A stretch of 62,896 nucleotides of DNA, counting the filler, from Octopus bimaculoides (taxonomy: Eukaryota), in the NCBI RefSeq assembly GCF_001194135.2. It is 5 parts of 5 records of this genome, joined end to end, with 100 filler letters (N's around TTAATTAATTAA, not from the genome) between each part and the next. Parts side by side here need not be neighbours in the genome. Positions count along the whole stretch, not along the records: positions 1 to 16,966 come from NC_069010.1; 4 more parts are not named here. One strand, written 5' to 3'. Within the stretch, counting starts at the first letter, position 1, and each line of letters begins with the position of its first letter. The notes under the pieces are model-generated. The model had not been told where the DNA came from and searched no databases. It was given only the letters and a program-made list of their open reading frames with translations. Positions 1,163 through 7,136 of the stretch are shown in pieces. The translations under genes were made by a program, and so were the position numbers.

Positions 1163-2383
1163 CTGTTCATCCTTGGCCGCTGTTACCTCTGCCAGTTCTT
1201 TTTCTAGCTTTTCAATAAGTTTCTTATTTTGAACAGCTTTCTCTGCCGTCTCTTTCAGGTATTCGTCTTGCTCCTTCTCTTCGAGAGGGGTGGTCAGCAA
1301 GCGGATTCTTAAAATGCTCTTCAACTCATTCAGTTTGTTTACAAACTCCTGTAGCTCCGGTGACATATTGTCTTTATATTTCACTATCTCCTTCGCGGCC
1401 GTCGTGTTTGCGTTGATAGCCCGCAGTATGTTCTTGCACGAGTTGCTCAGCCGGTCAGCGATGTACGACAGCTGCCGGCCGAGTTCATGCGCCCTCATGC
1501 TTTCGTCACTGCTCTCTCTCGTTTCTATCGAGGAATTCAAGCTCAAGCAAGTCTCGCTCGGTGATATGGACTGCAGCGGGTAATCGCCACGCTCTTCTTC
1601 CCCAAAGAGCGAGTAATTATAACTGTCGTAGCTGATCTTTTTCGTGGCTTTCCCAAGGCTGGCTTCGTATTCATCATCATGACAGATATACATGTCAGTG
1701 TCGTCTACATCGTCACTTGTGGAATGTCTATAGTGGACATCAATTTCATCTTCACTAGTTGTAATGATGGAACTGTCTTCCTCTTCAGCTTCACCGTCAA
1801 AATCACTAGAAAGTTTTCTCGTCATTTCTGCCTCAGCAGTCAAATCTATAACCTTAGGCTGTTGGTAGGCTGACCGACGCATCCGGCGGCAAAACGTGAG
1901 GAAATCACGCCGTGTTTCCGTGTAGGATACTTGGAGGCCGGCGTGATTCTTAAAACAGTCTTTCAAATGGTCGTCAAAGGCGTCATTGAAGAGGTGTAAA
2001 TTATCCAAGACAAATGGAAACATACCTACCAACACGGCTCTTTCGACCATGTCCACATATACGTTCATCACTCGTTGCGACTCGAGCGACGACAGCTTCT
2101 TCTTTGCTGGCTGCAAACTGATGTGAGGGTAGGTAACATTCACTTCTTCGGCGTGTTCATTGTTACTTGTTGCAGTGTTACTAACACTTACGTTATTATT
2201 CTGGACAGCGACAGATGCAGCTTCTGCTGGTGGTTCCTTTGGTGCTGTTTGAATTTCAGATACAGATTTTTGGTAGCCAATGTGATCGGAATTTATGCTT
2301 TCCGTAGTGATGAAACTACCGAGGGATGTTTTAAGCTCATTCATACCTTTAAACAGGTTTTGGTCTTCATTCCCCGTAGCCAT
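1163..2383 (-). CDS. DRC10: Dynein regulatory complex subunit 10 (IQCD)-like, large 5' coding exon (407 codons, phase-0 donor); later exons lie outside the window
   Basis: KKKLSSLESQRVMNVYVDMVERAVLV, SCKNILRAINANTTAAKEI and ELQEFVNKLNELKSILRIRLLTTPLEEKEQ...LIEKLEKELAE align, in order, with the vertebrate IQCD/DRC10 sequence as I recall it (KLTTIEAKRIMSILDE..., [45 protein letters not shown]...IDTLEKELAE). Similarity ends at CAG|GTATTA (1163/1162), followed by an intronic (TAT)n run. An in-frame TAG lies 23 codons upstream of ATG 2383. Confidence 0.85.
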
Positions 2384-5300: not shown

Positions 5301-7136
5301 TTGCAATGTAGTGTATTGCGGTGCAGTTTGGAGTGGCGCGATGTAGTTTAGTTTAGTGTTGTGTTGTTCGGTCTGTTGCGATGTAGTGTATTGCGGTGCA
5401 GTTTGGAGTGGCGCGACGTAGTTTAGTTTAGTGTTGCNNNNNNNNNNNNNNNNNNNNNNNNNNNNNNNNNNNNNNNNNNNNNNNAGTGTTGTGTTGTTCG
5501 GTCTGTTGCGATGTAGTGTATTGCGGTGCAGTTTGGAGTGGCGTGACGTAGTTTAGTTTAGTGTTGTGTTGTTCGGTCTGTTGCGATGTAGTGTATTGCG
5601 GTGCAGTTTGGAGTGGCGCGACGTAGTTTAGTTTAGTGTTGCGTTGTCCGGTCTGCTGCGACGCAGGGTACTGTGTAGTGATGTAGTGAAGTGTGCGATT
5701 CGCTGCTGCAGTGCCGTGTGGAGTGATGTAGTATAAAGTGGGATGACTTGGAGTGGTACGGTACGATGGAGTGGTGTAGTGTAGGGCTGCACGATTTGGT
5801 TTGGTATACTGCGCAAGCGTACAATAGGGTCCAGCCTGTGGTGGTTTTGTATTGTAGGTTAAGATGTATTCTGTTTTGGGGCGGTTTAGGGAGACGTACT
5901 GATGAGTCGTTTGGTGTGGCGTAGTGTACTGGGATGTATTTTGTTGCGGGGTTGTGTACTTTGATGCACTTTGCTGCGATGTAGCGTGCTGGGATGTATT
6001 TTGTTGCGGTGTGGTGTGCTTTGATGCACTTTGATGTGATTTGGCACGCTGTGTTGTACTTTGTGGTTTGGTGTACTTCGATGCGCTTTTATGCGGCTTG
6101 GTTCGCTGTGATGTACTTTGAAGCAATGTGACACGCTGTGATGTACTCCGCGGTGTAGTGTACTCTGATGTGCTTTGATGTGGCTTGGCACGCTGTGTTG
6201 TACTTTCACGCAATGTGACACGCTGTGATGTACTTTGTGATGTGGAGGACCCTGATGCACTTTGATGTGATGTACTTTGATGTGTTGTACTTTGATGTGA
6301 TGTACTTTGATGTGATGTACTTTGGTCTTGTGCAGTGTGACGTGACGCAGAGGTGCGCGGTGTGGAGTTGAACTTCAAAAACTCTGATGGCTTAGTGCGA
6401 TGCGGTTTAGTGTGCCATGGTGCAACGTAAGGTGTGGTATAGTGTGATGTGGAGCAAGGTGCAGCCTTGCAGCCTCTGGCGTAGTTCGGTGTGGTGTACT
6501 GTAGGGAGCTGCAGTTTGTGATGTAGTATGATGTGTTGTTGTATACCGTGTTAGAACTTGGTCTCGTGTTGTATGGGACAGTGTTGTGTCGGGTGGTGCA
6601 TTGAAGTGGGACGTGTTGTTGTGTGGTGCAAAGTAACTGGGTGCGATTCGATGCGTTGCAGTGGGATTTTGAAGTGTGACAGTGTGCAGGGCGTTTAGGT
6701 GCAGTTTTGCATGGCTCACTGTAGTATAGTACGGTACTGTTTAGTGTATTACAGTGTTTTGCAGTGTAGTACGGTGTACTACGATGTGCACTAGAATGGT
6801 GCACCGAAGTGCATTTGTTTGCGTTGGCGGCGTTCTGTTGCGCAGCACAGTGTGAAGCGGTGCAGTATCGTGCCGTGCAGTGGTGGCGCTGTGATGCAGT
6901 GCAGGGCCGTGTCGCGCGGCACGAGGGGTTGCAGTGTTGCTGCTTGGAGTGGCGTAGCACGAATCGCTGTGGGACAGTGCAATGCTGTGACGCAGTGCAC
7001 TTGCAGTTGCAACGCGCAACAGAGCAGTGCGACGCACGCGGGGAATGGTGCAAGCTGCTCTTGCGGTTTGGGGGGATGGAGTGTGAAGGGAGGGGAGGAA
7101 GAGTCTTCTTCGGGGGAGTTGGGGGGAACAGTGTTG
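2367..7136 (-). CDS. Putative very long low-complexity ORF (T/H/Q/S/P/Y-rich, ~1,500 codons) encoded by the pentamer repeat region
   Basis: ORF 2367-5306 stays open up to the gap at 5437, and ORF 5428-7053 stays open up to the gap at 7136. Both translate the same 25-aa repeat on either side of the 5438-5484 gap, so they join in frame if that gap holds whole 75-bp units. The other minus frames are repeatedly stopped. No recognisable domain. Confidence 0.45.
3470..4190. repeat. 45-bp minisatellite made of three 15-bp subunits (encodes ESNTLESTALEANPQ on minus)
   Basis: Unit gactctagtgtgttg-gactcttgtgggttt-gcctctagcgctatg repeated about 10 times, decaying to 15-bp units towards 4190. Confidence 0.9.
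5156..5640. repeat. 75-bp tandem repeat (encodes QQTEQHNTKLNYVAPLQTAPQYTTS on minus)
   Basis: Unit starts at 5156, 5231, 5306 and 5381, then 5511 and 5586 after a gap. Each unit is 15 pentamers. Confidence 0.92.
5900..6330. repeat. 15-bp and 60-bp tandem units (QSTSH / QSASKHTTPQQNTSQHATSQ on minus)
   Basis: tgatgtgatgtactt-like 15-mers at 6240-6325 and ~60-bp repeats at 5920-6240. Confidence 0.75.

What the first reader, a model, noticed from the sequence alone, without database searches (positions are those of the whole stretch)
2367..7136. Pentanucleotide repeat field that keeps one frame open for ~1,500 codons: candidate microsatellite-derived protein
Seen in sequence: ~4.7 kb of degenerate 5-mer repeat has no stop in one minus frame on either side of two gaps, while the other minus frames are chopped into short ORFs. 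A 5-mer period cycles through all three frames, so TTA/CTA/TCA triplets should fall in every frame. I count dozens by eye outside the perfect arrays, and none lands in this frame. Every higher-order unit I can resolve (15, 45, 60, 75 bp) is a multiple of 3 as well as 5. Across the 5438-5484 gap both sides encode the same 25-aa unit. Inference: coding selection on a T/H/Q/S/P/Y-rich disordered protein with an acidic ESTAL/ESNTL block, possibly born from a simple repeat.
Basis: partly seen in the sequence, partly recalled or inferred. Interest (0 to 1): 0.78.

Follow-up and report, generated by a model that had tools for sequence, protein, structure and literature searches.

The report
Octopus repeat-built ORF upstream of DRC10
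A 4.7-kb stretch of decayed 5-base repeats in the octopus genome keeps one reading frame open for about 1,500-1,900 codons in three octopus species, with no ATG in it. It is transcribed as the leader of the mRNA for the cilia/flagella protein DRC10, so it is probably a young repeat-born coding region, though its translation is unproven.

Summary
Window 2367-7136 (minus strand, Octopus bimaculoides) is a degenerate pentamer field, roughly (CACNN)n in mRNA sense. One frame has no stop over 1,503 sequenced codons; the other two minus frames hold 11, 72 and 18 stops in the three segments. Both assembly gaps are compatible with one continuous frame: gap 1 is really 166 nt, and gap 2 is 67 mod 75 by repeat phase.

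Chance does not explain it. Pentamer-block shuffles gave no stop-free frame in 1,000 trials for the large segments. The O. sinensis orthologue is ungapped and open for 1,808-1,901 codons. A third octopus transcript is open for at least 288 codons. All 11 internal indels between O. bimaculoides and O. sinensis are multiples of 3. Aligned off-frames carry 33 species-specific stops, the ORF frame none. dN/dS is about 0.5.

The field is co-transcribed with exon 1 of the DRC10-like gene (LOC106881633) and ends at a TGA 14 nt past the conserved DRC10 ATG.

Oddities: no in-frame ATG, no 3-base compositional periodicity, and no homologue in the protein databases searched.

Translation, the start site and the relation to DRC10 translation remain open.

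The parts
2367..7136 (-). The whole pentamer-periodic open frame: 1,503 sequenced codons in three segments, reaching the edge of the 960-N gap at 7137.
   Evidence: The orthologous ungapped ORF in O. sinensis is L001 4591(4315)-10017.
5662..7136 (-). Block C, the 5' third of the ORF. It is mostly unique, Cys-containing sequence, with 30/57/60/87/15-nt arrays at 5910-6324. RNA contigs of three runs end at 7112-7117, a possible transcript 5' end.
   Evidence: 7 indels versus O. sinensis, all 3n; contig ends. Single-sequence AlphaFold2 gives mean pLDDT 34.8.
5137..5661 (-). 75-nt (25-aa) tandem array, unit QQTEQHNTKLNYVAPLQTAPQYTT(L/S). It is interrupted by assembly gap 2 (5438-5484). O. sinensis has 13.4 copies.
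   Evidence: Repeat phase at the gap edges gives a missing length of 67 mod 75, which is in frame.
4181..5136 (-). Unique middle part of the ORF with a strong 5-nt period. It holds 18 off-frame stops and 0 in-frame stops.
3472..4180 (-). Acidic 45-nt (15-aa) array, unit ESNTLESTALEANPQ and 15/60/75-nt variants. O. sinensis carries 20 copies of a diverged 45-nt unit (ESVTLESPALQSIPA).
   Evidence: Lag-15 autocorrelation z is 20 and lag-5 is weak.
3092..3296 (.). Assembly gap 1. Written as 205 N, its true length is 166 nt, which keeps the frame.
   Evidence: contigs bridge it with 166 letters; the first 30 letters read in frame.
2370..3091 (-). 3' (C-terminal) 240 codons of the ORF, alignable in three octopus species. 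Positions 2449-2510 hold the best-conserved nucleotide block (CACACCTCCACG..TTACGTCACACT, a CRE-like core).
2367..2369 (-). The TGA stop of the long ORF. It lies 14 nt downstream of the DRC10 ATG, in the +1-offset frame, at the same position in all three species.
1163..2383 (-). Coding exon 1 of the DRC10-like gene LOC106881633. The ATG is at 2383-2381 (context aaccATGg) and the GT donor is at 1162-1161. RNA contigs continue into exon 2 (..DEQ VKHKTMKIRKL).
   Evidence: the MA(T/S)/MT start is conserved in three species; spliced contig carrying both the leader and exon 2.

Best explanation
The field is a lineage-restricted open reading frame built on a decayed pentanucleotide lattice. So far it is seen only in octopuses. 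Natural selection keeps the frame open, which implies that ribosomes read it.

The product would be a Met-free repeat protein of about 1,800-1,900 residues. T+P+S make up about 38-40%, and Q, L, A, H, N and Y are also common. It is probably disordered.

The ORF forms the 5' part of the same spliced mRNA that encodes the axonemal DRC10-like protein. It stops 14 nt inside the DRC10 coding sequence, in another frame.

Shown:
- the open frame;
- its maintenance across species;
- co-transcription with DRC10.

Inferred:
- The ORF is translated. Initiation must then be at a non-AUG codon near the 5' end, or in an exon that the assemblies and contigs do not show.
- DRC10 itself is still reachable by ordinary scanning. 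The leader is G-poor and weakly structured, and it holds only 0-7 AUGs, each opening a uORF of 2-22 codons.
For: Identity of the locus:
- The window is O. bimaculoides CM046630.1. P0001/LOC106881633 matches at 100%.

Open frame in three species:
- 1,503 codons here.
- 1,808 codons from the first TTG, and 1,901 stop-to-stop, in ungapped O. sinensis.
- At least 288 codons to the contig end in an octopus transcript from SRR3401912, with 0/7/9 stops per frame and pentamer-shuffle P of 0.003-0.0045.

Selection on the frame:
- All 11 internal O. bimaculoides/O. sinensis indels are 3n: 3, 18, 12, 15, 30, 30, 18; 3, 12, 18; 3; plus one 15 that the aligner split into 14+1.
- None is 5, 10, 20 or 25, the lengths pentamer slippage should give.
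- In an orthologous non-coding block, 30 of 50 gaps are 1 nt.
- Aligned off-frames hold 25 shared and 33 species-specific stops. The ORF frame holds 0.
- Neutral substitution simulation expects 10.5 new in-frame stops, and 0 of 2,000 runs gave none.
- dN/dS is 0.52, against 0.79 and 0.92 in the off-frames. Divergence is ordered pos2 < pos1 < pos3 in all three species pairs.
- Every well-supported tandem period is 3n in both species.

Transcription:
- One RNA contig (depth 548) runs from 3526 across gap 1, through the DRC10 ATG and exon 1, into exon 2.
- Contigs of other runs cover up to 7117, and there are no splice joints inside the field.
- Raw reads cover the field and exon 1 at similar depth.
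- The third-species contig is a fully spliced DRC10 mRNA carrying 850 nt of the ORF.

Annotation and leader properties:
- Gene callers placed protein genes on this stretch: 1,122 aa here and 717 aa in O. sinensis.
- Leader AUGs: 7, 3 and 0 in the three species, all opening tiny uORFs.
- Folding energy is -0.08 to -0.17 kcal/mol/nt, against -0.20 to -0.27 for the CDS.
Against: - There is no in-frame ATG in 1,503 or 1,901 codons.
- RNA contigs of three runs end at 7112-7117 without loose ends, and unique segments further upstream have zero RNA depth. No upstream ATG exon is therefore in sight.
- Base composition is flat across codon positions (G 14% at all three) and there is no 3-nt periodicity. 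The sequence does not look like ordinary coding DNA.
- Amino-acid constraint is weak. The pos3 to pos1/2 divergence ratio is 1.3, against 2.6 in DRC10. Four-fold sites diverge less than those of DRC10 (0.209 vs 0.302), so much of the constraint is at nucleotide level.
- No homologue was found in 5.8 billion proteins or in 1.84 billion representatives, and there is no Pfam match.
- There is no ribosome-profiling or peptide evidence.
- Block C gives no contigs in the highest-expressing RNA run or in four DNA runs. This is unexplained.
- One animal is heterozygous for a breakpoint inside the ORF at 2959.
Confidence: 0.6

Rival explanations
1. The ORF is a separate upstream gene, as the public gene callers imply. 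It would have its own start codon in an exon that is hidden in the 960-N gap (7137-8096) or lies further upstream. DRC10 would normally be expressed from its own promoter inside or just after the field. The joint transcripts would be read-through or an alternative long-leader isoform.
For: Gene models are called separately: 1,122 aa spanning window 10442-2563, and 717 aa in O. sinensis. Contig depth falls stepwise upstream: X1 548 to 370, X2 16 to 7 to 3, and X3 15.8 to 8.1 at about 2860. A nucleotide block conserved in three species, with a CRE-like TTACGTCA, lies 70-130 nt upstream of the DRC10 ATG.
Against: In ungapped O. sinensis the frame closes at 4312-4314 inside (CA)n/(CATA)n microsatellite, with no in-frame ATG. 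RNA contigs end at 7112-7117 with no loose ends. Unique upstream segments 8780-8831 and 9014-9091 have zero RNA depth. The most abundant contig carries at least 1.1 kb of the field joined to spliced DRC10 exons.
Confidence: 0.2
2. The peptide itself does not matter. The frame is kept open because ribosomes that enter it, by non-AUG initiation in an AUG-poor, unstructured CA-rich leader, must travel to the DRC10 start. They would stop at the UGA 14 nt past the DRC10 AUG and re-initiate there. This is translational coupling or regulation of DRC10.
For: The stop falls at the same place, 14 nt after the AUG, in three species, and the frame stays open right up to it. Constraint is mostly on frame and nucleotide pattern, not on residues. 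The leader has few AUGs and weak structure.
Against: Re-initiation after ORFs this long is not known for cellular mRNAs (own knowledge). There is no TURBS-like UGGGA within 220 nt upstream in any species. The TGA position is forced by the conserved DRC10 codons Asn-Asp/Glu (AAT GAN), so its conservation needs no extra function. ATG depletion is not specific: its rotations TGA and GAT are equally depleted, and a CACNN lattice excludes all of them.
Confidence: 0.1
3. The ORF is an N-terminal extension of DRC10, joined by a programmed +1 ribosomal frameshift at the GAA-UGA site. This would give a giant repeat-DRC10 fusion protein.
For: Skipping the U of UGA puts the ribosome in the DRC10 frame at residue 6 in all three species: GAA(U)GAA GAC CAA, GAA(U)GAU GAA CAA, GAA(U)GAU GAU CAU. 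The geometry, a shift at a stop codon, resembles antizyme.
Against: The site is not the antizyme UCC-UGA-U consensus. No stimulatory structure was identified. The DRC10 ATG has a strong Kozak context, and the N-terminus is conserved from the Met in three species. Every out-of-frame overlap can be read this way by accident.
Confidence: 0.04
4. The field is non-coding satellite-like leader or promoter DNA. Its open frame would be a by-product of a CACNN lattice that cannot encode stops.
For: A perfect CACNN array has no stop and no ATG in any frame (reasoning). Dinucleotide shuffles already give open runs of 176-193 codons. The composition is not codon-like.
Against: The lattice treats the three frames alike, yet the off-frames hold 47 stops in non-array blocks against 0 in frame, (2/3)^47 = 5e-9. 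There are 33 species-specific off-frame stops against 0 in frame. Pentamer-block shuffles gave 0 of 1,000 stop-free frames. Indels are 3n only.
Confidence: 0.05

Closest known systems
Lineage-specific tandem-repeat, mucin-like (PTS-rich) disordered proteins
   Same: About 38-40% Thr+Pro+Ser. Long in-frame minisatellite arrays (15- and 25-aa units) whose copy number and unit sequence differ between species. Fast-evolving with no detectable homologues.
   Different: No signal peptide or N-terminus is known. There is no Met at all. His, Gln and Tyr are abundant. The coding sequence rests on a 5-nt lattice conserved in three species. It lies in the leader of another gene's mRNA.
Genes or ORFs born or elongated from simple repeats, e.g. 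notothenioid antifreeze glycoprotein (own knowledge) and the tandem-repeat-elongated ORF in human VPS9D1-AS1/MYU (PMC12888051, abstract seen)
   Same: An ORF whose length comes from amplified short units. It has low complexity and is taxon-restricted.
   Different: Here the basic unit is 5 nt, not a multiple of 3. The open frame therefore cannot be inherited from the repeat and must be kept open against decay in one frame only. The size, about 1,800 codons, is far larger than typical young ORFs.
Overlapping upstream ORFs that end inside the main coding sequence, e.g. ATF4 uORF2 (own knowledge)
   Same: It sits in the 5' leader of the same mRNA and ends out of frame a few codons past the main AUG.
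   Different: Those are AUG-initiated and tens of codons long. This one has no AUG and is about 1,500-1,900 codons long.
Termination-reinitiation bicistronic messages, e.g. calicivirus TURBS and pneumovirus M2-1/M2-2 (own knowledge)
   Same: A long first ORF whose stop lies within a few nucleotides of the second ORF's AUG.
   Different: No UGGGA/TURBS motif upstream. This is a cellular mRNA, and no evidence of coupling exists.
[quoted passage not shown]
   Same: Translation without AUG through repeat-derived RNA would be needed here as well.
   Different: RAN translation reads pure expansions in all frames and is pathological. Here the repeat is degenerate, only one frame is open, and it is conserved between species.
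G-poor CAA-rich translational leader (TMV omega; own knowledge)
   Same: A CA-rich, G-poor leader with weak predicted structure and few AUGs.
   Different: Omega is 68 nt long. This leader is about 4.7-5.7 kb and carries a conserved open frame.

Membership tests
Protein-coding sequence under purifying selection | The reading frame is kept open in orthologues, with no stops and no frame-shifting indels | tested here: met
   O. sinensis is open for 1,808-1,901 codons. All 11 indels are 3n. There are 0 in-frame stops against 58 aligned codon positions with an off-frame stop. The third species has 0/7/9 stops per frame.
Protein-coding sequence under purifying selection | dN/dS below 1 and an excess of third-position change | tested here: met
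   dN/dS is 0.52, against 0.79 and 0.92 in the off-frames. Position differences are 160/144/200, and the same order holds in three species pairs. The signal is weak compared with DRC10 (0.18).
Protein-coding sequence under purifying selection | An AUG start codon | tested here: not met
   There are 0 in-frame ATGs in 1,503 (O. bimaculoides) and 1,901 (O. sinensis) codons.
Protein-coding sequence under purifying selection | 3-nt periodicity and codon-position composition bias | tested here: not met
   Lag-3 autocorrelation is about 0 while lag-5 z is 5-12. G is 14% at all three positions.
Protein-coding sequence under purifying selection | Evidence of translation (ribosome footprints, peptides) | not testable with these tools
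   No ribosome-profiling or proteomic data were reachable.
Pentanucleotide microsatellite or satellite field | A period of 5 nt throughout | tested here: met
   Autocorrelation peaks at 5, 10 ... 30 appear in all blocks outside the main arrays, in three species. The dominant pentamer classes are ACACC, ACTGC, ACACT and ACATC. The ESTAL array is the exception, being 15/45-nt.
Pentanucleotide microsatellite or satellite field | Length change by multiples of 5 and rapid neutral turnover | tested here: not met
   Indels are 3n. The only multiples of 5 are 15 and 30. Identity is 80-87%, against about 70% in the flanking non-coding block.
Mucin-like PTS-repeat protein | Tandem repeats rich in Thr, Ser and Pro | tested here: met
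   T 16.9%, P 10.4%, S 10.4%. There are 25-aa and 15-aa arrays.
Mucin-like PTS-repeat protein | Signal peptide or secretory N-terminus, and O-glycosylation | not testable with these tools
   The N-terminus is undefined (no ATG, 960-N gap upstream).
Bicistronic mRNA with termination-reinitiation (TURBS type) | Both ORFs on one mature mRNA, with stop and restart codons within a few nucleotides | tested here: met
   Spliced contigs carry both ORFs. The TGA lies 14 nt after the ATG in three species.
Bicistronic mRNA with termination-reinitiation (TURBS type) | An upstream 18S-complementary motif (UGGGA) | tested here: not met
   Absent within 220 nt upstream in three species.
Antizyme-type +1 programmed frameshift | The downstream frame is +1 and the shift site is at the ORF1 stop codon | tested here: met
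   GAA UGA followed by the DRC10 frame at +1, in three species.
Antizyme-type +1 programmed frameshift | The UCC-UGA-U shift site and stimulatory RNA elements | tested here: not met
   The site is GAA-UGA-A/U. No Rfam match was found in the window. Stimulatory structures were not searched specifically.
DRC10/IQCD (the downstream gene, not the finding itself) | DRC10_N domain and orthologues named DRC10 | tested here: met
   The precomputed Pfam domain is PF27661. Hits include O. sinensis, starfish and sea-cucumber DRC10(-like) proteins.

The most novel reading that the evidence does not exclude
An AUG-less ORF of about 1,800 codons, laid on a conserved pentanucleotide lattice, is translated from the cap-proximal end of the DRC10 mRNA by non-AUG initiation. 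It is also functionally coupled to DRC10 synthesis. The coupling would be either re-initiation at the AUG 14 nt upstream of its stop, or a +1 shift at GAA-UGA that fuses the repeat protein to DRC10. That would be a new way for an animal mRNA to encode two products, and a clear case of a large protein born from a non-triplet microsatellite.
Probability: 0.1. Interest if true: 0.85.

Novelty: new variant of a known kind. Interest (0 to 1): 0.62.

Why it matters
If ribosomes read this frame, it is an unusually clean example of coding sequence born from a non-triplet (5-nt) microsatellite. The repeat itself cannot carry a frame, so the 1,500-1,900-codon open frame, the 3n-only indels and the one-frame absence of stops directly record selection acting on a very young, very large, low-complexity ORF.

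It also poses a concrete translation puzzle. The ORF has no AUG, sits in a 4.7-5.7 kb leader, and stops 14 nt into the DRC10 coding sequence. How a flagellar gene is expressed from such an mRNA can be tested with Ribo-seq, Iso-Seq/CAGE and reporters.

Practically, it shows that the public gene models at this locus are unreliable around the assembly gaps. These are a 420-aa truncated DRC10 and 1,122-aa and 717-aa "proteins".

Tried and rejected
- Pfam scan of the three ORF segments and of DRC10 exon 1 gave nothing above cut-off.
- A protein database search with the 1,808-aa O. sinensis ORF gave 0 hits. A local phmmer run showed the method does detect the O. bimaculoides and third-species ORFs, so the products are simply not in that database.
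- An exhaustive HMMER search of 1.84 billion representatives with segment A gave 0 hits.
- Rfam on the whole window gave 0 matches.
- Literature searches turned up nothing on this locus. Terms tried: octopus + bicistronic; pentanucleotide + octopus; cephalopod + uORF/non-AUG.
- AUG depletion as evidence for selection on scanning was rejected as specific evidence. ATG is 5-14 times below dinucleotide-shuffle expectation, but its rotations TGA and GAT are equally depleted, and a CACNN lattice excludes all three.
- The idea that uORF synonymous sites evolve 2.5 times slower than those of DRC10 (NG86 dS 0.29 vs 0.70) was toned down. Four-fold sites give 0.209 vs 0.302, only marginally different.
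- 15-mer block shuffles are not a valid null because they preserve the frame.
- An alternative testis TSS near 5650, inferred from run X1 lacking block C, was not adopted. Four DNA runs lack block C in the same way, so it is either a polymorphism or a filtering artefact.
- The SINE-rich upstream stretch gave only repeat noise, apart from zero depth on its unique parts.
- Frame-offset by assembly error was rejected. The same offset between the ORF and DRC10 is present in RNA contigs and in three species.

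
Full report
LOCUS. The window is Octopus bimaculoides chromosome record CM046630.1 (GCA_001194135.2), positions 8,900,009-8,925,442, reversed. Locus L003, fetched through the annotated protein, is 100% identical to the window piece by piece, with the same N runs. On the minus strand an ATG at 2383 (context aaccATGg) opens coding exon 1 of LOC106881633, a DRC10-like (IQCD) axonemal protein. 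Protein P0001 matches at 100% identity and carries Pfam DRC10_N. The O. sinensis orthologue (604 aa) and a third octopus protein (607 aa) begin at the same Met: MATGNEDQNLFKGM, MASVNDEQNLFKGM and MTLENDDHGLLKGM. The finding, 2367-7136, is everything immediately upstream of that ATG on the same strand.

THE OBSERVATION. On the minus strand the three sequenced segments hold these stops per frame:
- A (2367-3091): 5, 6 and 0;
- B (3297-5437): 52, 20 and 0;
- C (5485-7136): 6, 12 and 0.
The only stop in the open frame is the terminal TGA at 2369-2367. That gives 240 + 713 + 550 = 1,503 open codons.

The "pentanucleotide field" is also real. Base autocorrelation peaks at lags 5, 10, 15 ... 30 (z = 5-12) in every block outside the main 45-nt and 75-nt arrays, and shows nothing at lag 3. 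DRC10 exon 1 shows the ordinary lag-3 signal. In mRNA sense the commonest pentamer classes are ACACC, ACTGC, ACACT, ACATC and AACAC, roughly (CACNN)n. The acidic ESTAL block is the exception: it is a 15/45-nt minisatellite with little 5-nt signal. Tandem Repeats Finder periods are 15, 30, 45, 60 and 75, but also 57 and 87. All well-supported periods are therefore multiples of 3, but not all are multiples of 5. O. sinensis gives the same picture with 15, 18, 30, 45, 57, 75, 87 and 90.

THE GAPS. Contigs of four RNA runs and four DNA runs bridge gap 1 with 166 letters instead of 205 N. Frame continuity between B and A needs a length of 1 mod 3, and 166 satisfies it. The first 30 gap letters, recovered as a loose end of raw reads, translate in the ORF frame as ..YYTSPHHRRL before DCSYPYF. 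This parallels O. sinensis AYYTSPHQKLNCSYPYF. Gap 2 was not bridged because short-read contigs collapse in the 75-nt array. However, 5437 is phase 0 and 5485 is phase 68 of the 75-nt unit. The missing piece is therefore 67 mod 75, again 1 mod 3. This is what continuity needs, and it explains the apparent frame change between B and C in window coordinates.

IS IT MORE THAN CHANCE? A perfect CACNN array cannot contain a stop or an ATG in any frame, so long open runs are cheap here. Dinucleotide shuffles give longest runs of 176-193 codons on average and 477 at most. However, 3 and 5 are coprime, so the lattice treats all three frames alike, and the other two frames serve as an internal control.
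- Outside the main arrays there are 47 off-frame stops and 0 in-frame stops, (2/3)^47 = 5e-9.
- Shuffling 5-mer or 10-mer blocks gave a stop-free frame in 0 of 1,000 trials for B, B-mid, C and the whole O. sinensis field. For the short segment A alone the rate was 0.017-0.03.
- 15-mer blocks preserve the frame and are not a valid null.

OTHER SPECIES. The O. sinensis contig VCDQ01005722.1 (L001) has no gaps here. It carries one ORF, 4591-10017, of 1,808 codons from the first TTG. Stop-to-stop it runs 1,901 codons from 4315. It is collinear with C, the 75-nt array, B-mid, the 45-nt array and A, and ends ..GSNHGFGE* over the DRC10 ATG at 10001. A 2,710-nt transcript contig (L002) comes from SRR3401912, an "octopus" metatranscriptome (PMC11662614). 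It holds the complete, spliced 607-aa DRC10 coding sequence preceded by 850 nt. Those 850 nt are open in the homologous frame to the contig's end and finish ..FDHDFGE**. Stops per frame there are 0/7/9, with pentamer-shuffle P of 0.003-0.0045. The 5-nt period is present in all three species.

TESTS OF SELECTION (O. bimaculoides versus O. sinensis). Frame-blind MAFFT nucleotide alignments of the blocks outside the main arrays cover about 3.2 kb at 80-87% identity.
- All 11 internal indels are multiples of 3: 3, 18, 12, 15, 30, 30, 18; then 3, 12, 18; then 3; plus a 15 that the aligner split into 14+1. None is 5, 10, 20 or 25, which pentamer slippage should produce.
- In the orthologous non-coding block upstream, 30 of 50 gaps are 1 nt long.
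- Aligned off-frame codons hold 11+14 shared and 8+25 species-specific stops. The ORF frame holds none.
- Applying the observed substitution spectrum to the O. bimaculoides sequence produces 10.5 new in-frame stops on average, and never 0 in 2,000 runs.
- Nei-Gojobori dN/dS is 0.52 in the ORF frame, against 0.79 and 0.92 in the other frames. Divergence is ordered pos2 < pos1 < pos3 in all three species pairs.

The amino-acid constraint is nevertheless weak. Per-position divergence is 0.153/0.137/0.191, against 0.141/0.104/0.323 in DRC10 exon 1. Four-fold sites diverge somewhat less than those of DRC10: 94/450 = 0.209 against 35/116 = 0.302. What is conserved is therefore chiefly three things: the frame, the CA-rich lattice and the overall composition.

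TRANSCRIPTION. In run X1 one contig of 3,010 nt (depth 548) runs from 3526, across gap 1, through the ORF stop, the DRC10 ATG and exon 1. It continues past 1160 into exon 2, where the loose end reads KHKTMKIRKL. The next contig covers 3779-5166 at depth 370. In runs X2, X3 and X8 contigs reach 7116, 7117 and 7112 and stop there without unmatched tails. No splice joint lies inside the field. Raw reads of three 2026 libraries cover the field and exon 1 at similar low depth. Unique segments further upstream (8780-8831 and 9014-9091) have zero RNA depth. The field is therefore part of the mature DRC10 mRNA, with a probable 5' end near 7117. Depth falls stepwise towards the 5' end, so additional internal start sites are possible.

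WHAT DOES NOT FIT AN ORDINARY GENE.
- There is no in-frame ATG at all.
- Base composition is the same at the three codon positions, with G at 14%.
- There is no homologue in two very large protein collections and no Pfam or Rfam match. The database miss is not a method failure.
- A single-sequence AlphaFold2 model of block C has mean pLDDT 34.8. This is consistent with disorder but is weak evidence.
- The whole leader holds only 7 (O. bimaculoides), 3 (O. sinensis) and 0 (third species, 850 nt) AUGs, each opening 2-22 codons. Its predicted folding energy is about half that of the coding sequence. An ordinary scanning ribosome could therefore plausibly reach the strong DRC10 AUG.
- ATG depletion is not specific, because its rotations TGA and GAT are equally rare.

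THE STOP/START OVERLAP. In all three species the ORF ends at the TGA formed by the DRC10 codons Asn-Asp/Glu (..G AAT GAN), 14 nt after the ATG. Those codons are conserved for DRC10's own sake and another stop follows within a few codons, so the conserved position needs no special explanation. Two non-standard readings remain possible but unsupported:
- Re-initiation at the AUG just upstream. No UGGGA/TURBS-like motif was found.
- A +1 shift at GAA-UGA, which in all three species would continue in the DRC10 frame from residue 6.
The best-conserved nucleotide block of the ORF's 3' end (2449-2510, with a CRE-like TTACGTCA) could equally be a promoter element, an RNA element or a conserved peptide.

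CONCLUSION. The most likely account (confidence about 0.6) is a young, octopus-restricted, repeat-born ORF that ribosomes read. It would encode a Met-free T/P/S/Q/H/Y-rich disordered repeat protein and forms the upstream part of the DRC10 mRNA. Initiation would be at a non-AUG codon or at an exon not yet seen. The main rival (0.2) keeps the protein but makes it a separate gene with a hidden start and gives DRC10 its own promoter. Smaller rivals are a translated-but-meaningless coupling leader (0.1), a +1 frameshift fusion (0.04) and a purely compositional artefact (0.05). Public gene callers have already placed unnamed protein models on this stretch, of 1,122 aa here and 717 aa in O. sinensis. 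Nothing was found in the literature searched.

UNEXPLAINED. Block C (5641-7136) gives no contigs, even at 80% likeness, in the highest-expressing RNA run X1 or in DNA runs X30, X32, X33 and X34. It is present at single-copy depth in the reference animal (X27) and in X12, and in RNA runs X2-X5, X8 and X15-17. Presence tracks fragmented, low-depth assemblies. One possibility is that the tool's silent removal of contigs resembling human DNA hits long contigs that run into the upstream (CA)n. A real presence/absence polymorphism is not excluded, and it would weaken the case for constraint on the 5' third of the ORF.

Noticed in passing
window 5641-7136: Block C has no contigs in RNA run X1 (depth 370-548 on the rest of the field) or in four DNA runs (X30, X32, X33, X34), even at 80% likeness. 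It is present in X27, X12 and eight other RNA runs. This is either a structural polymorphism or silent filtering of long contigs that reach the upstream microsatellite.
   Followed up: partly
window 2959: DNA run X33 has a contig that leaves the reference at 2959 (loose end AGACGGTTCTTCGTCAGAAGAGGAAAAACT, depth 20 against about 47). This looks like a heterozygous insertion or rearrangement inside the ORF in one animal.
   Followed up: no
window 2449-2510 (minus strand): A nucleotide block nearly invariant in three octopus species lies 70-130 nt upstream of the DRC10 ATG. It contains TTACGTCACACT, a CRE/ATF-like core. It could be a proximal promoter element for DRC10.
   Followed up: partly
window 977-2383 and L003 10001-15434: The public DRC10-like model (P0001, 420 aa, ending ..DEQVLHIAKVQGRNRS) is truncated compared with 604-607 aa in the other octopuses. 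RNA contigs splice at 1163 to an exon reading VKHKTMKIRKL. The rest of the gene lies among large N gaps.
   Followed up: partly
window 3325-4221 (+ strand): A 298-aa open frame runs antisense to the 45-nt ESTAL array (DSSVLDSCGFASSAV units). O. sinensis has a 402-aa counterpart. This is the expected by-product of a stop-free repeat unit, and the + strand is otherwise full of stops.
   Followed up: partly
window 253-705 and 8957-9559: Several copies of the abundant octopus SINE occur (..gtttcagtcatttgactgcggccatgctggagcaccgcc..). They match dozens of places in the O. sinensis locus and attract thousands of RNA unitigs.
   Followed up: no
window 8097-8800, L001 3720-4410: Dense (TG/CA)n, (CATA)n and (CTT)n microsatellites lie directly upstream of the field in both species. 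The 960-N gap (7137-8096) probably hides more of the same.
   Followed up: no
window 11315-11480 (+ strand): The divergently oriented neighbour starts with a small-GTPase P-loop exon ([25 protein letters not shown]). The called gene (457 aa) carries Ras, FKBP_C and TPR Pfam hits.
   Followed up: no
window 5544, 4537, 5599: Single-contig RNA variants. 5544 T>C on the + strand is A>G in mRNA sense (editing-like or a SNP). 4537 and 5599 C>T are G>A in mRNA sense, and 4537 changes Cys to Tyr in the ORF.
   Followed up: no
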